Virus record (IMG/VR): IMGVR_UViG_3300032242_000723
Coordinates: 248,001-312,000 of that record
Reading direction: 5' to 3' (one strand)
Length of the DNA stretch: 64,000 nt
The notes beneath the pieces are model-generated. The model saw only the letters and a program-made list of their open reading frames with translations. It ran no database searches and had not been told where the DNA came from. Positions within the stretch are counted from its first letter, which is position 1. Each line of letters begins with the position of its first letter. Below, one piece after another: positions 35,685 through 43,813 of the stretch. Both the position numbers and the translations under genes were made by a program.

Positions 35685-36683
35685 ATGGCAAGTTTAGCAG
35701 AAATCCGCGCTCGCATTGCAGCAGCAGAAAATAAGGGTCAAAACAAAGGCTCAAATACACAATCAGATAACGCAATCTATCCTCACTGGAATATCGATGA
35801 AGGCACTACTGCCACTGTTCGATTTCTTCCAGATGCTGATCCAAACAACACATTCTTTTGGATTGAACGTCAAGTAATCAAGCTCCCATTCAACGGCATT
35901 AAGGGCGACGCCGACAGCAAGCAAGTCACTATTCAGGTGCCATGCGTAGAGATGTATGGTGACAACTGTCCTATTCTAGCAGAAGTTCGCCCTTGGTATA
36001 AGGATGATTCGCTTAAGGATATGGCTAACAAGTATTGGAAGAAGCGTTCTTATATCTATCAGGGCTTTGTTCGGCAAAACCCAATTGGCGATGACAAGAC
36101 TCCAGCGAATCCTATTCGTCGCTTTGTCGTTACCTCGCAGATTCAAACGATCATCAAGGCATCACTTATGGATCCTGAGATGGAAGAGTTGCCAACTGAC
36201 TACACGAAAGGTCTTGACTTCAACGTCCGTAAGACTTCTGGTAAGGGAGGTTATGCAGAGTACACTACATCCAGTTGGGCACGTAAGGAAACTTCTTTGA
36301 CTGAGGCTGAAATGGCTGCTATTGAAGCACATGGTCTGTACAATCTTGCTGACTTCTTGCCAAAGAAGCCAAGTGAAGCAGAACTTCGCATCATCAAAGA
36401 GATGTTTGACGCTTCAGTTGACGGTCGTCCATATGACACCGATAAGTGGGGTGCATACTATCGTCCTTACGGTGTTGATGCACCAGCAGGTACTGCAACA
36501 GATAAACAAACGGCTACTGCTGAAACCAGAGCCCCTGTTACAGCTCCTACTACAGTCACTTACTCATCAGATCCAGATGATGTTCCGTTTGAAACAGATC
36601 AACCAATCGTGGTTCCTACTACAACTTCAAGCGACAAGGCACAGGACATTCTCGCAATGATCCGTGCAAGACAGCCTAAGTAA
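35685..36683 (+). CDS. Single-stranded DNA-binding protein (T4 gp32-like)
   Basis: VRFLP, PC.EMYG..CP, KYWKKRSY, G.DF..RKT...GY..Y..S.W, acidic C-terminal tail. Confidence 0.88.
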   Translation: MASLAEIRARIAAAENKGQNKGSNTQSDNAIYPHWNIDEGTTATVRFLPDADPNNTFFWIERQVIKLPFNGIKGDADSKQVTIQVPCVEMYGDNCPILAEVRPWYKDDSLKDMANKYWKKRSYIYQGFVRQNPIGDDKTPANPIRRFVVTSQIQTIIKASLMDPEMEELPTDYTKGLDFNVRKTSGKGGYAEYTTSSWARKETSLTEAEMAAIEAHGLYNLADFLPKKPSEAELRIIKEMFDASVDGRPYDTDKWGAYYRPYGVDAPAGTATDKQTATAETRAPVTAPTTVTYSSDPDDVPFETDQPIVVPTTTSSDKAQDILAMIRARQPK

Positions 36684-36976: not shown

Positions 36977-38047
36977 TTGGCAAAACCGTTCGATGTATCA
37001 AAATTCCGTAAGGATATTACTAAGGCCATTGATGGCCTAAGTATCGGGTTTAACGACCCAACAGATTGGATTAGCACAGGCAACCATGCACTTAATTATC
37101 TCATTAGCGGTGACTTTAATAAAGGCGTACCTCTTGGTAAAGTTACTGTCTTTGCCGGAGAGTCTGGATCAGGCAAGTCATTCATTTGCTCAGGAAATCT
37201 AGTAAGACACGCTCAAGAGCAAGGCATTTATGTCGTACTCGTTGATAGCGAAAACGCACTTGACGAGGCATGGCTACACGCTCTTGGCGTTGACACTAGC
37301 GAAGACAAGCTACTAAAGCTTAATATGGCAATGATTGATGACGTTGCTAGGACTATTCATGAGTTCATGAAGGGTTATAAGACTATCCCAGACGGCCCTG
37401 AAAAGCCTAAGGTACTGTTTGTTATTGACAGTCTTGGTATGTTGCTCACTCCAACTGACGTAAATCAGTTTGAAGCAGGTGACATGAAGGGTGATATGGG
37501 TCGTAAGCCTAAGGCACTGACTGCACTTGTTCGCAACTGTGTAAACATGTTCGGTAATCATAATGTTGGATTGGTTGCTACTAATCACACTTATGCTTCA
37601 CAAGATATGTTTGACCCAGACGACAAGATTTCAGGTGGTCAAGGGTTCGTATACGCATCTAGTATCGTAGTTGCGATGAAGAAACTAAAGCTCAAAGAAG
37701 ACGAAGACGGCAATAAGATTTCGGAAGTCAAAGGTATTCGTTCTGCATGTAAGATTATGAAGACGCGATATGCAAAGCCTTTCGAATCAGTTCAAGTCAA
37801 GATTCCATATGAGACTGGCATGAGTCCCTATTCAGGTCTAGTTGACTTGATTGAAAAGGCTGGCATGCTTGCAAAGGAAGGCAACTCACTTGTTTACACT
37901 CGTCTCGATGGTACAATCATCAAGAAGTTTCGTAAAGGCTGGGAGCGTAATGACGATAGCTGTTTGGACACTGTTATGACAGAGTTTGAACAGAAGTCAG
38001 CCAAGATCGCTCCTATCATGGTCGAAGAAGAGGATTCAGCAGAATGA
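36977..38047 (+). CDS. uvsX: RecA-like recombinase (UvsX)
   Basis: AGESGSGKS, DSENAL, IDSLGML, TNHTY, SGGQG..YASS, KTRYAKPF. Confidence 0.93.
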   Translation: MAKPFDVSKFRKDITKAIDGLSIGFNDPTDWISTGNHALNYLISGDFNKGVPLGKVTVFAGESGSGKSFICSGNLVRHAQEQGIYVVLVDSENALDEAWLHALGVDTSEDKLLKLNMAMIDDVARTIHEFMKGYKTIPDGPEKPKVLFVIDSLGMLLTPTDVNQFEAGDMKGDMGRKPKALTALVRNCVNMFGNHNVGLVATNHTYASQDMFDPDDKISGGQGFVYASSIVVAMKKLKLKEDEDGNKISEVKGIRSACKIMKTRYAKPFESVQVKIPYETGMSPYSGLVDLIEKAGMLAKEGNSLVYTRLDGTIIKKFRKGWERNDDSCLDTVMTEFEQKSAKIAPIMVEEEDSAE

Positions 38048-38331
38048 GTCTAGCACTGGTTAATGAAATCTGGAAACTTCTCAAGGTTAGCATTGAAGCA
38101 GGTGACACTAGTGGTGCCGCAGAGATATTAGTCAACTATCTAGTTGAGGAAGACTACTCTCCGGCTGAAATTAAGCAGGCATTTCGTAATGATACAAACA
38201 TTAAGAAAGCACTAGACTACTATTTAGAAACGCCAGAAGATGGTCTTGTCGAAGTCAAGCATGATCCATATGAATATGAAGATGAAGACGAACTATACTT
38301 TGATGACGAAGACTTTGACGACACGTACTGA
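38044..38331 (+). CDS. Hypothetical protein with acidic tail
   Basis: Coupled between uvsX and the uvsY-like gene. Confidence 0.7.
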   Translation: MSLALVNEIWKLLKVSIEAGDTSGAAEILVNYLVEEDYSPAEIKQAFRNDTNIKKALDYYLETPEDGLVEVKHDPYEYEDEDELYFDDEDFDDTY

Positions 38332-38789
38332 TGGCGTGGTACAGTAGAGTCTCACAAGATTTAAGTGTACTCCCTGATTTTATCTCACACTATGAAGGTG
38401 AGATACAGTCAGCAAAGGGCGATGTCAAGGTATATGGCAATGTTGAAAAGAACATTGCTGCCCTTCCAGGAATTGCTGAGTATCGTTTCAATCAACTACA
38501 AGAGATTGAAGCGGTACTCAACTTTCTTAACATACAACTACGAAAGATTCGCAGGAAGCACTTTCAGAAATATTTAGAGAAATACAATCGTCAACTATCA
38601 AGCCGTGATGCCGAAAAATACGTAGACGGCGAAGATGAAGTGGTTGACTTTGAAGTTTTGATCAATGAAGTCGCACTGATACGAAATAAATTTTTAGGTG
38701 TCATGAAGGGACTAGATAGTAAGAACTTCATGTTAGGCCATATTGTCAGGCTTAGAACAGCTGGTATGGAAGATATTACAATCGGATGA
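38331..38789 (+). CDS. uvsY: Recombination mediator (UvsY-like)
   Basis: Helical protein with KYLEKYNRQLSSRDAEKYVDGE; position next to uvsX. Confidence 0.7.
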   Translation: MAWYSRVSQDLSVLPDFISHYEGEIQSAKGDVKVYGNVEKNIAALPGIAEYRFNQLQEIEAVLNFLNIQLRKIRRKHFQKYLEKYNRQLSSRDAEKYVDGEDEVVDFEVLINEVALIRNKFLGVMKGLDSKNFMLGHIVRLRTAGMEDITIG

Positions 38790-38796
38790 ACATATA

Positions 38797-39978
38797 ATGA
38801 ATAATGCTTATGTAGTCGGCTATGGAATGATTGATGCGTTGGGAAACAATCCAAAAGATTGCTTTCAACGAATGTTAGACGATAATGATTATTCTTCCGA
38901 CATTCCGTCAATGCTTGAAGAAAATCTCAAAGTTTATCGCGGATATCAAGTAGATGAATCCAAATTAATACTTCCAGAAGGTTGGAGCAATAAAGGTGTT
39001 AACTTATCTCAAAAACTTGCTATGCATTCTGCAATGCAAGCATTAGAAATGGCAAATCTTCCCTATAGTAGCAATGTTGCAGTTATTTACAGCACAACTT
39101 CGGTGATTGATGAAGCATTAGAAGAGTTTTTTCCCAAACTTATTGCGAACAAAAGAATTAACCCTCGCACGGTAATCAATCGTATTCCTGATATGACTGC
39201 CGATCATATTAGCAGCTATTGGAAATTTATGGGAGTAAGTGCTGCGGTACTTGGCTCTTGTGCAACAGGTATTCTATCGATTGATTATGCAATGCGTTTA
39301 TTAGACGAATATGACTATGTGGTATGCGGTAGTGGTGACGCAGGAACCTTTCGTATTGCAATGAAGAGTTTTTCTTCAGGCGGCGCATTAGGAAACAATA
39401 ATAAACCATTTGATGACGACCGTGAAGGATTTGTCATGGGATCAGGTGCAGGTGTATTGATTCTAGCATCGGCTAAAAGTGTTGAAAAGTATGGTTCAAA
39501 AGTTTATGCTACTTTGTATCCTGCAGGTTTGGCAAGTGATGCATATGATCAAACGTCTCCTGCCGCAGATGGACGAGGATCCCGCTTAGCATTATCCAAA
39601 GCAACAGCAAGCAATGTTACAATCGATGCAGTATCGGCACATGCTACTAGCACTCCTATAGGAGACATCATTGAATATACTTCGGTAACTGATTATTTCG
39701 GAAAGATACCTATCTATGCACCTAAATCTAAAATAGGCCATACCCTAGGTGGTTCTGGTATCGTTGAAACGATTTATGCCATTGAGTCAATGAATGCTGG
39801 CATAATACCTCATATACAAAACCTAAATAATGCATCGATGGATACATATAACTGTTTAGTACGTACTAACACGCTTTTTGAAGATAAGCCTACGTTACGC
39901 ACTCTTAATAACTCATTCGGTTTTGGTGGTAAATGTGCATCGCAAATTATTGAGGTAACAAGGCACGATTTCGGTTGA
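38797..39978 (+). CDS. fabF: Beta-ketoacyl-ACP synthase II (FabF-like)
   Basis: Start corrected to ATG 38797. Cys-His-His triad: GSCATG, SAHATSTPIGD, KSKIGHTLG; NNSFGFGG; GFVMGSGAG. Confidence 0.92.
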   Translation: MNNAYVVGYGMIDALGNNPKDCFQRMLDDNDYSSDIPSMLEENLKVYRGYQVDESKLILPEGWSNKGVNLSQKLAMHSAMQALEMANLPYSSNVAVIYSTTSVIDEALEEFFPKLIANKRINPRTVINRIPDMTADHISSYWKFMGVSAAVLGSCATGILSIDYAMRLLDEYDYVVCGSGDAGTFRIAMKSFSSGGALGNNNKPFDDDREGFVMGSGAGVLILASAKSVEKYGSKVYATLYPAGLASDAYDQTSPAADGRGSRLALSKATASNVTIDAVSAHATSTPIGDIIEYTSVTDYFGKIPIYAPKSKIGHTLGGSGIVETIYAIESMNAGIIPHIQNLNNASMDTYNCLVRTNTLFEDKPTLRTLNNSFGFGGKCASQIIEVTRHDFG

Positions 39979-40003
39979 CTTCGTTTGTTCGTTTTGATAG
40001 ATT
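39975..40003 (+). promoter_or_regulatory. Early promoter
   Basis: ACGATTTCGG-TTGACT-17 bp-TAGATT; upstream decamer shared with the promoter at 42745. Confidence 0.7.
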
Positions 40004-40040
40004 GAATCATAGACAGAAACACACAAACGGAGCTACTCAC

Positions 40041-40358
40041 ATGACTCAGTTCTCAAACGAAAATCTCAATGATTCTAACGGCTGGCTCTCTTACGGTCCA
40101 GAACGCAAGTTCGTTGCTAACTTCTCAAAGCGTGGTGGTGGTAAGGCTACCTTCATCAAGTTCTTGATCAAGAACTTCACTGTTGAAGAATATTTTGAGA
40201 TGCTTGAGACTAACAAGTCTCCACTTGGCATCGCTCAAACTAAGGGCTATGTTCTTCCTCACATCAAGAAGTGGCTCAAGGATCGGGGTTTGCCCCAGAC
40301 TTCAGCTGGCTTTGACACGATGATCCAGCAAAATATGGCTGCTCGATTGGCTGCATAA
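40041..40358 (+). CDS. Hypothetical early protein
   Basis: GGAG RBS; ATG at 40041. Confidence 0.7.
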   Translation: MTQFSNENLNDSNGWLSYGPERKFVANFSKRGGGKATFIKFLIKNFTVEEYFEMLETNKSPLGIAQTKGYVLPHIKKWLKDRGLPQTSAGFDTMIQQNMAARLAA

Positions 40359-40379
40359 TCCTAGATTAAGGGTCATACT

Positions 40380-40712
40380 ATGTCCGCATATGGCTATTAT
40401 AAAATCAAAATGAGGCAACGGCTATCAGAAGCACAAAATCATCGCTGCTGCTATTGTCATGTACGCTTTAGTGATGATCGTGCCTCCCCTTATTATGCAA
40501 CACTTGAACATGTTATTCCAATATCGCGCGGCGGAAGTAATAACTTAAAAAATCTTGTGGTAGCGTGTGAAGCATGTAATAACATTCGTGGTAGTAGATA
40601 TAAGGCTGAAGAGTTCGGCAACCTAATACAGCATGGTCGCCTGGGTCTTTTGATGAACAACATGCATTTCATTTTTGATAAAATCAAAGCAAACGAGGAA
40701 CTTGCCACATGA
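40380..40712 (+). CDS. HNH endonuclease
   Basis: CCYC, TLEHVIPISRGGSN..KNLVVACEACNN.RG. Confidence 0.9.
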   Translation: MSAYGYYKIKMRQRLSEAQNHRCCYCHVRFSDDRASPYYATLEHVIPISRGGSNNLKNLVVACEACNNIRGSRYKAEEFGNLIQHGRLGLLMNNMHFIFDKIKANEELAT

Positions 40713-40915
40713 CTACGCCTGAAACGATTGAACGCCTTGACAACATCATCGCTAAGTTGGACGAGTCTGACGGCATGTTCGTTTACGGTATGCTCAACAA
40801 GATTGAAGCACTTGAGCGTGAGGTTGCCAAGCTGAAAGAGGATATTGGTTACCTAGAGTTCGCACATGACGATGCAATGTATAACGAAGGTTGGAAATTC
40901 GGTGACGGTTACTAA
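40709..40915 (+). CDS. Small coiled-coil hypothetical protein
   Basis: ATGA overlap. Confidence 0.6.
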   Translation: MTTPETIERLDNIIAKLDESDGMFVYGMLNKIEALEREVAKLKEDIGYLEFAHDDAMYNEGWKFGDGY

Positions 40916-40916
40916 C

Positions 40917-41183
40917 ATGAAACTGAATATTTCTGCATTCAAGCCTTATGATAAGGACGAAGGATATCACTTCTGTTTTTACCATGAAGAATATCTAAAG
41001 ATTGGGGTTAATCATAACAACCCTAAAGACGGGGGTTATGTTTTGTATGTGATTGACAACGACGATTTTGTCATGAATAAGTTTTATGCATCATATGCAG
41101 ATGTCATGATTGACTTTATGTCACTGCTCAAGGTACCACATATACAGATTCGTTCATTGGAAGCACTTGGTTTAGAAGTTTAG
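40917..41183 (+). CDS. Hypothetical protein
   Basis: ATG at 40917, directly after the upstream stop. Confidence 0.55.
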   Translation: MKLNISAFKPYDKDEGYHFCFYHEEYLKIGVNHNNPKDGGYVLYVIDNDDFVMNKFYASYADVMIDFMSLLKVPHIQIRSLEALGLEV

Positions 41184-41243: not shown

Positions 41244-42464
41244 ATGAACTACGATTTTCCGATTATCAATAACATCTCGGATGTGTTGCCAGCGATTGAA
41301 GGTCGTGACGAGTTCACGGTTGCTCAAAAGGACGGCTACACTGTCATCAACTATAATGTGATGTTTGAGGATACCTTTCCTCCCGTGAAAGTTACTGGAG
41401 GTTCTGCTAAGATGCGAGCCGAAAGGTCTCGTCATAACGTCCTGCGTCGTGAATGTCGCGGCATCATGTTTGACTCCGTGACTGGCGACATCATCCGTCG
41501 TCCTTTTCATAAGTTCTTTAATGTGAATGAAAGGGATGAAACTCAAGATAACACTATTGATATGTCTAAACCTCATGTTATCCTTGAGAAGCTGGACGGT
41601 AGCATGGTCGCTCCATTCTACGCGAATGATTTAATGCTATTTGGAACGAAGATGGGTGCTACTGATGTAGCGAAGCCTGTTGAAGCCTTTGTTAATGCAA
41701 ATCCAAAGTATATTGACTTTTCGCGAAACCAGATTGAAAATGGGTTTACTCCTATCTTTGAATGGTGCTCGCGTAAGCAGCGTATCGTTTTAGATTATCC
41801 TGAAGATCAGTTGATCTTGACTGGTCTCCGTCATCTTGAAACTGGTGAATATGTTTATTATGACGGTTTTGCTAGACTAGGAAAGGCTATGGATATCCCA
41901 GTTGTCCGTGCGTTTGACTCTCGTTCGGATATGAAGGAGTTCATTGAGTACACTCGTGATCTAGAAAACCTCGAGGGCTTTGTCGTTCGCTTTGACGATG
42001 GCCACATGCTAAAGTTAAAGTGTGAATGGTACCTTCAGATCCACCGTGCGAAGGAAGCGATTCTACAAGATCGTAACATCGTTGAGTTGATCCTTGACGA
42101 ACACTTGGATGATGTGAAGCCTCACCTGCTTCAGGAAGATCGTGATCGTATCAACAAGTTTGAGAATGATTTCAATCAAGCGATTATGAAAATATCAACT
42201 CACATCCTCGACAAGATAGTCAAAGATGTTCGTGGCTTGAAGATTTCTCGTAAGGACTTTGCTCTTGTCGTGTCTACTGTCGGTAACCAAAAAGGTGTCA
42301 ACTATATCGCTCCTATCATCTTTACTCTTTGGGATACTAATCCTATTGAGGTGAGTGATGTTGATGCACAGGTCCGCAAGATGGTACGCAAGTATCTGAA
42401 TAAGATTGCGAGGTACGAAGAGATTCGTGCTGCGTGGTTCCCTAATGTAATCTATAACATCTAA
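41244..42464 (+). CDS. rnlA: RNA ligase 1 (T4 RnlA-like)
   Basis: ECRG..FD, FHKFFN, EKLDGS (motif I), EGFVV (IV), LKLKCEWY (V). Confidence 0.88.
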   Translation: MNYDFPIINNISDVLPAIEGRDEFTVAQKDGYTVINYNVMFEDTFPPVKVTGGSAKMRAERSRHNVLRRECRGIMFDSVTGDIIRRPFHKFFNVNERDETQDNTIDMSKPHVILEKLDGSMVAPFYANDLMLFGTKMGATDVAKPVEAFVNANPKYIDFSRNQIENGFTPIFEWCSRKQRIVLDYPEDQLILTGLRHLETGEYVYYDGFARLGKAMDIPVVRAFDSRSDMKEFIEYTRDLENLEGFVVRFDDGHMLKLKCEWYLQIHRAKEAILQDRNIVELILDEHLDDVKPHLLQEDRDRINKFENDFNQAIMKISTHILDKIVKDVRGLKISRKDFALVVSTVGNQKGVNYIAPIIFTLWDTNPIEVSDVDAQVRKMVRKYLNKIARYEEIRAAWFPNVIYNI

Positions 42465-42486: not shown

Positions 42487-42732
42487 ATGGCTACCGCACT
42501 AGAAACTATTAAGTTCGCTGAAGGCAAACTCCTTGCTGCTAAGACATACTTCCCTGGCAGCAATGAGATTGCTCGTTTGGAGTTCATTGTTGAGGATCTG
42601 AGGTCCAAGTTGACCCCAGAAGAACTCATTCAGCATACCACTAAGGTGGTCAAGACCGAAGCCGATGTAGAGGCTGAGCGTATTGCTACTGTTAAGGCAA
42701 TGAACGAAAACCGAGATAAGCCTAGCATTTAG
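42487..42732 (+). CDS. Hypothetical protein
   Basis: AAGGAA RBS. Confidence 0.65.
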   Translation: MATALETIKFAEGKLLAAKTYFPGSNEIARLEFIVEDLRSKLTPEELIQHTTKVVKTEADVEAERIATVKAMNENRDKPSI

Positions 42733-42805: not shown

Positions 42806-43813
42806 ATGCCTCGCGTTCTCGTTAAGTCTGGTGAATATCGCAACTATCCGGTGACCAATGCCGAGTTTGAACTTGTTAAGGGTTTTCAAGTCGGTGCAAA
42901 GGGTGGTTATCTAACTGTTAAGAACGGTGGGTTTTTCCCCATTGACATTGAAGATATCAAGATCAAGGTCGCAGGACTTGATAACTTTGAAATCGACGGC
43001 GAACCAGTTGTTGTTGAAACTAAGGTCACAGAGACCGACGAAGAGGCAATGAACCGTATTGCTACACGCTTTCAAATCCTAGATGAAATGTCAGCGGCTT
43101 GTATCAATGGCAATATTCGTGCGATGATCGTCTCGGGTCCTCCGGGTGTTGGTAAATCGTTCGGCGTTGAAACGCAACTTGAAAAGTCTGCGATGTTTGA
43201 CAAGATCGCAGGCAATCGTGTGCGTTATGAAGTTGTCAAGGGTGCAATGACTGCATTGGGTCTGTATGCCCAGCTTTACAAGTACAGCGACAAGAAGAAC
43301 ATCCTAGTGTTTGATGACTGTGATAGCGTGTTCATGGACGATCTTACCTTGAACATTCTAAAGGCTGCTCTTGATAGTGGCAAGCGTCGCAAGATTTGCT
43401 GGAATTCGGACTCGCGACTATTGCGTGAAGAAGGTATCCCGCACAGTTTCAACTTTGAAGGCTCTTGCATCTTCATCACGAACATCAAGTTTGACAACAT
43501 TAAGTCAAAGCGTCTTCAAGATCACCTCGAAGCATTGCAATCTCGTTGTCACTTCCTTGATCTCACGATTGATACAGCCCGCGATATGATGCTTCGTATC
43601 AAGCAAGTTGACCGTGATGCTAATGGCGGATTGTTCAACGACTATCATTTCCAAAACAATGAGGGCGAAACTGTCCTCGCATACATGGAAGATAACAAGG
43701 CTAAGTTGCGTGAGTTGTCTATTCGTATGGCACTCAAGATTGCTGATCTTGTCAAGATTTCCCCTACTAACTGGAAGAACCTCGCTCAAAGCACTTGTAT
43801 GAAGCGTTCGTAA
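42806..43813 (+). CDS. AAA+ ATPase, phage-type, function unknown
   Basis: SGPPGVGKS, LVFDDCD, FITN, LQSRC. Confidence 0.85.
   Translation: MPRVLVKSGEYRNYPVTNAEFELVKGFQVGAKGGYLTVKNGGFFPIDIEDIKIKVAGLDNFEIDGEPVVVETKVTETDEEAMNRIATRFQILDEMSAACINGNIRAMIVSGPPGVGKSFGVETQLEKSAMFDKIAGNRVRYEVVKGAMTALGLYAQLYKYSDKKNILVFDDCDSVFMDDLTLNILKAALDSGKRRKICWNSDSRLLREEGIPHSFNFEGSCIFITNIKFDNIKSKRLQDHLEALQSRCHFLDLTIDTARDMMLRIKQVDRDANGGLFNDYHFQNNEGETVLAYMEDNKAKLRELSIRMALKIADLVKISPTNWKNLAQSTCMKRS

What the first reader, a model, noticed from the sequence alone, without database searches (positions are those of the whole stretch)
38797..39978. Stand-alone intact ketosynthase (FabF-like) in the recombination operon
Seen: complete Cys-His-His triad; inserted between the uvsY-like gene and an early promoter that overlaps its stop codon; codon usage looks more A/T-rich than its neighbours (by eye, not computed); no ACP gene in the window. 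Established: KAS II controls acyl-chain elongation and is an uncommon phage gene. Inference: host membrane-lipid remodelling, or acyl supply to the glycan-modification pathway.
Basis: partly seen in the sequence, partly recalled or inferred. Interest (0 to 1): 0.65.

Follow-up and report, generated by a model that had tools for sequence, protein, structure and literature searches.

The report
Virus-only FabF-like ketosynthase, freshwater jumbo phage
A 333-kb freshwater phage carries an intact, strongly conserved fatty-acid chain-extending enzyme from a large virus-only branch of the FabF family; it has no carrier protein of its own, so it most likely taps the host's fatty-acid machinery during infection.

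Summary
Window 38797-39978 (+) encodes a 393-aa two-domain beta-ketoacyl synthase. The Cys155-His282-His315 triad, Lys310 and the gate Phe376 are all intact. The AlphaFold2 model (pLDDT 93) superposes on FabF at TM 0.91.

It is neither a host contaminant nor a chimera. The same uvsX-uvsY-KS order occurs in independent contigs at 95% and 72-74% identity, and dN/dS is 0.04.

The gene belongs to a large clade found only in viruses. That clade has at least 135 IMG/VR loci and more than 120 metagenome clusters, all in T4-type phages where tested. It sits on a long stem (1.95 changes per site). The best match among 185,579 cellular species is only 27-36% identical.

It is FabF-like but not a FabF equivalog. 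It scores 209 bits against a cut-off of 494. Thr403-Asn404 of the gate network is replaced by an invariant Lys379 and by Cys380.

This genome has no ACP, PPTase, FabD/G/Z/A, desaturase or PlsC. Relatives often sit beside desaturase-like genes (27 of 85 loci), and sometimes FabG or ACP. That supports lipid remodelling through host ACP.

The promoter over the stop codon is real: it is an element repeated at least nine times in the genome. "fabF" has already been noted in freshwater pelagimyophages, so this is a new member of a known kind.

The parts
38797..39978 (+). Beta-ketoacyl synthase (KS) gene, 393 aa, virus-only FabF-like clade. Catalytic Cys155, His282, His315, Lys310, gate Phe376; clade hallmark GFGG-Lys379-Cys380.
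38331..38789 (+). UvsY-like recombination mediator. Its stop lies 7 nt before the KS start, so the two genes are probably translationally coupled.
38044..38331 (+). 95-aa acidic ORF between uvsX and uvsY, conserved in relatives (cluster 42). It overlaps both neighbours by 1-4 nt.
36977..38047 (+). UvsX/RecA-like recombinase, 61-69% identical to those of jumbo phages (Phosso, Vibrio 2.275.O, GAP32, CBB).
35685..36683 (+). gp32-like ssDNA-binding protein by position and synteny with GAP32. It has no Pfam hit.
39960..40043 (+). Repeated promoter-plus-leader element: -35 TTGACT at 39975-39980, -10 TAGATT at 39998-40003, conserved leader, GGAG, ATG at 40041. It has at least 9 copies in the genome. 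Its upstream part encodes the KS tail TRHDFG and the stop codon.
40041..41183 (+). Variable cassette between KS and rnl1: 105-aa gene (phrog_22119), HNH endonuclease at 40380-40712, and 68-aa and 105-aa ORFs. It is absent in the 95% relative L004, where rnl1 follows KS directly.
41244..42464 (+). T4 Rnl1-type RNA ligase, the conserved downstream neighbour of the KS in close relatives.

Best explanation
The gene encodes an active elongating beta-ketoacyl-ACP synthase of a virus-only, FabF-like clade. It is the last gene of the co-directional, tightly packed gp32-uvsX-uvsY unit, so it is probably made together with the replication and recombination proteins (inferred). The phage has no ACP, PPTase or any other fatty-acid-synthesis gene. 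The enzyme must therefore load acyl chains from host acyl-ACP onto Cys155 and condense them with host malonyl-ACP (inferred from the conserved catalytic set). That would add chain-elongation capacity to the host type II fatty-acid synthase during infection. The likely benefit is to keep up, or to shift toward longer or unsaturated chains, the supply of membrane lipid in a cold freshwater host during a long jumbo-phage infection (inferred from gene neighbours in relatives). The jumbo lineage probably acquired the gene from smaller T4-type freshwater phages, where it sits among desaturase-like and oxygenase genes.
For: Enzyme:
- Both KS domains are present.
- The AF2 model has pLDDT 93.3 and pTM 0.94. 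Its top structural matches are FabF enzymes at TM 0.89-0.91.
- Every residue needed for transacylation and decarboxylative condensation is invariant in 51 relatives: Cys163, His303, His340, Lys335, Thr305/307, Asp311, Glu314, Phe400, Asp265 (FabF numbering). The FabF-type loop 2 is also kept.

Selection:
- dN/dS is 0.042 against a relative with dS 0.52, similar to uvsX (0.05) and gp32 (0.03).

Genuine phage gene:
- The same synteny is seen in independent contigs, and contigs of other freshwater runs cover both junctions.
- Gp23 capsid genes are present in this record and in 5 of the 9 KS-bearing relatives' records searched, including the two complete relatives; the four without are 32-59% complete.

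Dependence on the host:
- This 92%-complete genome has no ACP, PPTase, FabD, FabG, FabA/Z, desaturase or PlsC.
- Two complete relatives (145 kb and 235 kb) also lack an ACP; only 2 of 29 records have one.

Lipid role:
- FA_desaturase family genes occur in 12 of 29 KS-bearing records, and a desaturase-like cluster lies within 10 kb of the KS in 27 of 85 loci.
- An acyl-ACP desaturase lies directly downstream, with an ACP nearby, in L002, L003 and L007.
- A FabG-like reductase scoring 230-240 bits lies within 5 kb in four records.

Origin:
- The clade is monophyletic (SH-aLRT 100).
- The jumbo-phage sequences are nested inside it, next to phages estimated at about 160-175 kb from their contig length and CheckV completeness.
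Against: - No activity, expression or host is known. No RNA run holds the region.
- Asn404, whose Ala mutant leaves FabF 2-3% active (bioRxiv 10.1101/2021.02.13.431092), is Cys here. Thr403 is Lys.
- Three of six FabF residues taken as ACP-docking are lost: Arg68 is deleted, Lys69 is Gly, Arg206 is Gly. An 8-residue loop after Arg206 is also missing. The identity of this residue set rests partly on my own recollection; only Lys65 and Lys69 were checked in a paper.
- The glycine-rich pocket loop (FabF Gly107-Ile108) is replaced, so substrate length may differ.
- The protein scores far below all FabF/FabB equivalog cut-offs.
- This genome has none of the lipid partners seen in relatives.
- The ACP-docking prediction gave no verdict.
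Confidence: 0.55

Rival explanations
1. It is a specialised condensing enzyme that is not a plain FAS II elongase. The rewired gate (Lys379-Cys380) and altered pocket would adapt it to other substrates. Candidates are chains modified by the phage desaturase or oxygenase partners seen in relatives, short chains, or CoA thioesters. The product would be a particular lipid or small molecule rather than bulk fatty acid.
For: - Lys403 is invariant and Asn404 is replaced by Cys or Ser in the main subclade, whereas 78 of 80 bacterial relatives keep Asn.
- The pocket loop and ACP-patch residues have changed.
- The stem branch is long, at 1.95 changes per site.
- Unknown tandem paralogs (cluster 3), 2OG-Fe(II) oxygenases and a P450 often lie next to the gene.
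Against: - The pantetheine-binding Thr305/Thr307, the FabF-type loop 2, and Lys119-Arg120 (FabF Arg127-Lys128) are kept.
- Nine basal members still have Asn404.
- The partners that could be named are ordinary lipid genes.
- This genome has no partner at all.
Confidence: 0.22
2. It is a metabolic brake. The protein would mainly decarboxylate malonyl-ACP or trap acyl-ACP, throttling host fatty-acid synthesis and freeing acetyl-CoA, ATP and NADPH for phage replication.
For: - Placement in a replication and recombination unit.
- The altered gate network could uncouple decarboxylation from condensation. This is an inference from the N404A phenotype in FabF.
Against: - The acyl-accepting Cys155 is invariant. 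Dedicated decarboxylating KS variants usually lose it (my own knowledge of KSQ/CLF-type enzymes).
- Relatives are linked to desaturases, FabG and ACP, which points to making lipids rather than blocking them.
Confidence: 0.1
3. It is a bacterial contaminant, an assembly chimera, or a very recent capture of the host's own fabF.
For: GC3 is mildly low, at the 6th percentile. The synonymous distance to the close relative is higher than for the neighbours: 0.52 against 0.10-0.26.
Against: - The uvsY-KS junction and the KS-promoter junction are the same in independent assemblies from other samples.
- The best cellular match among 185,579 species is 27-36% identical.
- The one record with a bacterial label (a 'Ca. 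Elulimicrobium' MAG) is a T4-like phage contig.
- The clade is monophyletic.
Confidence: 0.02
4. It is a decaying or non-enzymatic remnant with no function.
For: None beyond the lack of partner genes in this genome.
Against: dN/dS is 0.04, the frame is full length, all catalytic residues are invariant across 39-100% identity, and the fold is predicted with confidence.
Confidence: 0.03

Closest known systems
Bacterial FabF (KAS II), e.g. E. coli, B. subtilis, V. cholerae
   Same: - Same thiolase fold, at TM 0.89-0.91.
- Same Cys-His-His triad, Lys335, GFGG gate with Phe400, and Asp265 loop 2.
- Similar length, about 390-413 aa.
- Best NCBIfam and PDB matches.
   Different: - Only 24-30% identical, and 209 bits against a cut-off of 494.
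- Thr403-Asn404 is replaced by Lys-Cys.
- Arg68, Lys69 and Arg206 are lost, and there is an 8-residue deletion after Arg206.
- The pocket loop Gly107-Ile108 is replaced.
- There is no acpP/fabG/fabD neighbourhood.
- It is encoded only by viruses.
'fabF' reported in freshwater pelagimyophages (Zaragoza-Solas et al. 2020, PMC7029224) and fabF counted in viral AMG surveys (PMC10653327)
   Same: - The paper lists fabF, a stearoyl-CoA desaturase and speH as unique to the freshwater group.
- Relatives of this KS at 56-58% identity sit in 30%-GC T4-like contigs next to speH, desaturase-like genes, Asp/Arg hydroxylase, DenV and ribosomal protein S21.
- They are very probably the same family.
   Different: - Here the gene is in a 333-kb jumbo phage of the GAP32/Rak2-like backbone, in the recombination unit, and without any lipid partner.
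- The papers give annotation only. They report no clade analysis and no residue analysis.
- I did not compare against the paper's own sequences.
Mitochondrial KAS (Arabidopsis mtKAS 1W0I, human OXSM 2IWZ)
   Same: It gives the best phmmer E-value in the PDB (3e-39) and a similar fold match. It is likewise a single KS that covers all elongation steps.
   Different: The margin over bacterial FabF is trivial. The viral clade is a separate long branch, and the GFGG-Lys-Cys hallmark is not shared.
Virus-encoded fatty-acid desaturases (Zhong et al. 2020, PMC7300359; Lake Baikal viruses, PMC7678222)
   Same: They are phage auxiliary genes proposed to tune host membrane lipids in cold waters. Desaturase-like genes are the commonest neighbour of this KS family whose function could be named.
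   Different: It is a different enzyme, and those genes look recently taken from hosts. This KS clade has no close cellular source.
FabB (KAS I) and type II PKS KS-alpha/CLF
   Same: Same fold and same triad.
   Different: Scores are lower: 121 bits for FabB and 115 bits for a polyketide KS. There is only one KS gene in the genome, so there is no CLF partner. No PKS tailoring genes were found.

Membership tests
Beta-ketoacyl synthase superfamily (thiolase fold, Pfam PF00109 + PF02801) | Both KS domains score above Pfam gathering cut-offs | tested here: met
   73.1 and 73.3 bits against a cut-off of 20.8. AF2 model versus FabF structures: TM 0.91.
Elongating decarboxylating KS (FabF/FabB type) | Cys-His-His triad plus Lys335, Phe400 gate, Thr305/Thr307, Asp311/Glu314 | tested here: met
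   All are present and invariant in 51 relatives.
FabF equivalog (TIGR03150 / NF005589) | Score at or above the curated NCBIfam cut-off | tested here: not met
   208.9 bits against 493.75, and 210.6 bits against 387.
FabF equivalog (TIGR03150 / NF005589) | Asp265-Asn404 hydrogen-bond network of the gate (N404A leaves 2-3% activity) | tested here: not met
   Asp265 is kept (Asp248), but Asn404 is Cys380 (46 of 51; Ser in 5) and Thr403 is Lys379 (51 of 51). Bacterial relatives keep Asn in 78 of 80.
FabF equivalog (TIGR03150 / NF005589) | Basic ACP-docking residues Lys65, Arg68, Lys69, Arg127, Lys128, Arg206 | tested here: inconclusive
   Three of six are kept (Lys66, Lys119, Arg120) and three are lost. 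The docking prediction with E. coli ACP gave no verdict. Only Lys65 and Lys69 were verified in the paper; the rest of the residue list is from my own knowledge.
FabF equivalog (TIGR03150 / NF005589) | Placement inside bacterial FabF in a tree | tested here: not met
   The viral sequences form their own clade (SH-aLRT 100, stem 1.95) outside the 28 bacterial sequences plus E. coli FabF. This was a quick tree with a long-branch warning, and the root is not inferred.
FabF equivalog (TIGR03150 / NF005589) | Condensing activity on acyl-ACP, including C16:1 to C18:1 elongation | not testable with these tools
   Needs an enzyme assay or complementation.
Virus-only KS clade (this family) | Monophyly, the GFGG-Lys hallmark, and occurrence only on viral contigs | tested here: met
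Phage auxiliary metabolic gene | A metabolic enzyme of cellular type, flanked by phage genes on both sides, conserved and under purifying selection | tested here: met
   uvsY lies upstream and rnl1/HNH downstream. Synteny holds in relatives. dN/dS is 0.04.
Type II polyketide KS-alpha/CLF pair | A second, Cys-less KS partner and a dedicated ACP | tested here: not met
   There is only one KS and no ACP in the genome.

The most novel reading that the evidence does not exclude
The virus-only KS clade would be a mechanistically distinct condensing enzyme, not merely a diverged FabF. In it an invariant Lys at FabF position 403, with Cys at 404, replaces the Asp265-Asn404 gate network, and the ACP patch and acyl pocket are remodelled. 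T4-type aquatic phages, and secondarily this jumbo phage, would use it to make a lipid or acyl product that the host synthase does not make, possibly together with the unknown tandem paralogs and desaturase-like genes that accompany it.
Probability: 0.2. Interest if true: 0.7.

Novelty: new member of a known kind. Interest (0 to 1): 0.4.

Why it matters
Phage control of host lipid synthesis is poorly understood. Desaturase genes have been discussed, but no phage condensing enzyme appears to have been characterised in the literature I could search.

This gene shows that a single KS family, with no close cellular source, is spread over many aquatic T4-type phages and has moved into a jumbo phage. 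That makes it a good, testable candidate for how phages keep or reshape host membranes.

The natural Lys-Cys replacement of a gate element that is important in FabF also offers a ready-made experiment on how ketosynthase gating works.

For annotation, the family should be named "FabF-like ketosynthase, viral clade" rather than KAS II.

Tried and rejected
- Complex prediction with two KS copies plus E. coli ACP scored 0.28, under the mark of 0.34. That is no verdict, and it counts neither for nor against binding.
- Megablast of the locus against deposited phages found nothing.
- tblastn of the KS against deposited phages gave 29 hits, all below 60% identity (23.9-31.2% among those listed). The listed ones look like bacterial DNA filed as phage.
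- A single-protein scan of IMG/VR found only 3 loci; the alignment-based scan was needed.
- Searching for a hidden ACP: phmmer with the E. coli and the phage ACP gave a best E-value of 0.92, for the 81-aa ORF at 42487-42732. That ORF has no Pfam hit and no Asp-Ser-Leu motif, so it was rejected.
- A first attempt used 40042 as the start of the downstream gene and was out of frame. The ATG is at 40041.
- No RNA run holds the region, so expression and transcript ends could not be tested.
- Pfam gave no family for the tandem paralogs next to the KS in many relatives (cluster 3), nor for the 242-aa gene that follows the KS in the 72-74% relatives.
- The large representative-protein search was not run. 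It carries no names or context, so it could not separate viral from cellular relatives, and the word search and family scans had already settled the family.
- No alternative genetic code was needed.

Full report
**1. What is in the sequence**

The window is bases 248001-312000 of a 333,115-bp IMG/VR virus record that CheckV rates 92% complete. That record also encodes a T4-type Gp23 capsid protein.

The ORF at 38797-39978 (+) gives a 393-aa protein. It starts at an ATG 7 nt after the stop of a UvsY-like gene (38331-38789, phrog_231).

Upstream on the same strand, with overlaps of 1-4 nt, lie three genes:
- a 95-aa ORF;
- UvsX/RecA (36977-38047);
- a gp32-like gene (35685-36683).

UvsX is 61-69% identical to the recombinases of jumbo phages such as Sinorhizobium phage Phosso, Vibrio phage 2.275.O, GAP32 and CBB.

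In GAP32 the order terminase, SSB, UvsX, a 154-aa gene and helicase is the same, but other genes fill the slot after the 154-aa gene. The KS therefore sits in a variable slot of a conserved replication and recombination module.

**2. Is it an intact ketosynthase?**

- Pfam finds both KS domains.
- phmmer against PDB sequences gives mitochondrial KAS and FabF at about 1e-39 to 1e-37.
- An AlphaFold2 model built on 51 relatives has pLDDT 93.3 and pTM 0.94. Its best structural matches are FabF enzymes at TM 0.89-0.91, followed by mitochondrial KAS and FabB.
- Mapping onto E. coli FabF shows Cys163, His303, His340, Lys335, Thr305, Thr307, Asp311, Glu314, Phe400, Phe202, Phe229, Thr270, Pro272 and Asp265 all present and invariant in the 51 relatives.

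The triad claim is correct.

**3. Is it a contaminant or a chimera?**

No. The evidence is:
- A JGI contig with a 95% identical protein has uvsX, a 93-aa gene, uvsY, KS and then rnl1.
- Contigs at 72-74% identity keep gp32, uvsX, uvsY and KS, one of them on a 327-kb contig.
- Contigs from other freshwater runs cover both ends of the gene.
- dN/dS against the 95% relative is 0.042 at dS 0.52. This compares with uvsX (0.05) and gp32 (0.03) and is far tighter than rnl1 (0.26).

GC3 is 0.269, against a genome mean of 0.364 (sd 0.068).

**4. What family is it?**

The word-based protein search found more than 120 clusters at 55-97% identity, all about 390 aa. A profile-seeded scan of IMG/VR found 135 loci, of which 80 were kept, at 39-95% identity on contigs of 29-47% GC.

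The same kind of scan over one genome for each of 185,579 bacterial and archaeal species found nothing better than 27-36% identity.

The single source record with a bacterial name, a "Candidatus Elulimicrobium humile" MAG, is a 56-kb contig. It carries T4 RNase H, speH, DenV, an Asp/Arg hydroxylase and ribosomal protein S21, so it is a phage contig binned by mistake.

In a maximum-likelihood tree, 37 viral sequences form one clade (SH-aLRT 100) on a stem of 1.95 changes per site. They sit apart from 28 bacterial sequences and E. coli FabF. This was a quick search, and the tool warns of long branches.

NCBIfam ranks FabF models first, at 209-211 bits, but these are far under their cut-offs of 387 and 494. 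FabB, KasA and polyketide KS models score 115-125 bits.

The protein is therefore FabF-like in fold and chemistry, but it is not a FabF equivalog.

**5. How the clade differs from FabF**

- After the GFGG gate loop, bacterial relatives have His/Val/Thr/Gln followed by Asn in 78 of 80 cases. The viral clade always has Lys there, followed by Cys (75 of 85 loci), Asn (9) or Ser (1).
- In E. coli FabF, Asn404 bonds to Asp265, and N404A keeps only 2-3% of activity (bioRxiv 10.1101/2021.02.13.431092). Asp265 is kept here, so a Lys379-Asp248 link may replace the lost one. That is inference.
- Of the basic residues I take to dock ACP in FabF, Lys65, Arg127 and Lys128 have equivalents. Arg68 is deleted, and Lys69 and Arg206 are Gly. 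An 8-residue loop after Arg206 is missing. Only Lys65 and Lys69 were confirmed in the paper.
- The Gly107-Ile108 pocket loop is replaced by Thr/Val/Cys/Ile followed by Ser. This alignment is less certain in the N-terminal third.

**6. Partners**

This genome has no ACP, PPTase, FabD, FabG-type reductase, FabA/Z, either type of desaturase, or PlsC acyltransferase. The same search method does find the KS.

Across 29 larger KS-bearing viral records:
- 2 have an ACP;
- 12 have a membrane FA_desaturase family gene;
- 1 has an acyl-ACP desaturase;
- 5 have a short-chain (FabG-type) reductase match, four of them strong at 230-240 bits.

The two complete genomes (145 kb and 235 kb, both with terminal repeats) have no ACP.

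In my clustering of all ORFs within 10 kb of the KS, the desaturase-like cluster is the second commonest neighbour (27 of 85 loci). The FabG-like gene lies within 5 kb in one lineage, and the acyl-ACP desaturase is the very next gene in another, with an ACP 7 kb upstream.

Other frequent neighbours are typical of the flexible regions of aquatic T4-like phages:
- 2OG-Fe(II) oxygenases and Asp/Arg hydroxylases;
- speH and ThyX;
- MazG, DenV and RNase H.

This matches the published note that freshwater pelagimyophages uniquely carry fabF, a stearoyl-CoA desaturase and speH (PMC7029224).

HMMs built from these partner clusters find nothing in the present genome. Here the KS is truly alone.

**7. 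Evolution**

In the tree, the jumbo-phage sequences (window, L001, L008) are sister to L013 and L014. Those two come from contigs that CheckV puts at 30-44% of genomes of about 160-175 kb, and they have a different gene context. This group of five is nested inside the larger clade.

The simplest reading is that the jumbo lineage took the gene from smaller T4-type phages. This depends on the bacterial rooting and is an inference.

**8. The promoter**

The consensus scan alone is not significant. However, 39960-40043 matches at least eight other places in the genome. The copies share the -35 box, the TGCTATATT -10 region, a 35-nt leader, GGAG and an ATG. Contig depth rises fourfold there.

The upstream part of the element encodes the last six residues and the stop codon of the KS. 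In the 95% relative, the same -35 box follows the KS but leads into rnl1.

The 1.1-kb stretch at 40041-41183, which contains an HNH endonuclease, is therefore an insertion in this genome, and it brought or copied a promoter. The KS is thus the last gene of its unit. No terminator-like site separates it from the next promoter.

**9. Mechanism and rivals**

Most likely, at about 0.55, this is an active elongating KS working on host acyl-ACP and malonyl-ACP. It would sustain or skew fatty-acid elongation during infection.

The rivals are:
- a specialised enzyme with different substrates (0.22);
- a malonyl-ACP-draining brake (0.10);
- a dead gene (0.03);
- a contaminant (0.02).

The docking prediction with E. 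coli ACP gave no verdict and is not counted. No RNA data exist for the locus.

**10. Verdict**

Phage fabF genes are already listed in metagenome studies, so this is a new member of a known kind.

The points that appear not to have been described in the literature I could search are:
- the virus-only clade;
- its altered gate;
- its spread across T4-type phages into a jumbo phage.

Interest is moderate.

Noticed in passing
window 39960-40043 (+); other copies at genome positions near 69843, 90439, 90888, 92827, 113359 (-), 128754 (-), 154218 (-), 315832: An ~85-nt repeated promoter-plus-leader element (TTGACA, 17 nt, TGCTATATT, conserved leader, GGAG, ATG) with at least 9 copies. It looks like a phage-specific class of sigma-70-type promoters that share a 5' leader. 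Its upstream part doubles as the coding sequence for the KS C-terminal tail.
   Followed up: partly
window 40041-41183: A cassette made up of a 105-aa gene (phrog_22119), an HNH endonuclease (40380-40712) and two small ORFs lies between KS and rnl1. It is absent in the 95% relative L004 and only partly present in L005. It looks like an HNH-linked insertion that duplicated a promoter.
   Followed up: partly
window 38746 joined to 39972 in runs X2 and X3: Contigs in two freshwater runs join the end of uvsY to the repeated promoter and skip the KS. Only 30 nt lie on the shorter side, and the target is a repeat. This is therefore only a weak hint of KS-less relatives.
   Followed up: no
window 38797-39978 versus L004 10001-11182: The synonymous distance of the KS to the close relative (0.52) is two to five times that of gp32, uvsX and uvsY (0.10-0.26), and rnl1 is also high (0.47). 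This may mark a recombination boundary after uvsY or weaker codon selection.
   Followed up: no
L172 (GenBank RGCK01000001.1, 'Candidatus Elulimicrobium humile' MAG): This 56-kb contig of a bacterial MAG carries T4 RNase H, speH, DenV, ribosomal protein S21 and the viral KS. It is a T4-like phage contig binned into the MAG.
   Followed up: yes
L013-L025, L049-L059 and others, directly upstream of the KS; weakly similar ORFs at genome 134106-135826 (outside the window): Tandem arrays of two to five paralogs of 190-350 aa (my cluster 3) sit right before the KS in 22 loci and have no Pfam hit. Three tandem ORFs in this genome resemble them only at E 0.01.
   Followed up: partly
window 42487-42732 (+): This 81-aa ORF after rnl1, conserved in L004 and L005, gave E 0.92 to E. 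coli ACP. It has no Pfam hit and no Asp-Ser-Leu motif, so it is not an ACP. Its function is unknown.
   Followed up: yes
window 42806-43813 (+): A 335-aa protein with a weak AAA ATPase match (E about 1e-3). It is conserved downstream of rnl1 in the close relative.
   Followed up: no
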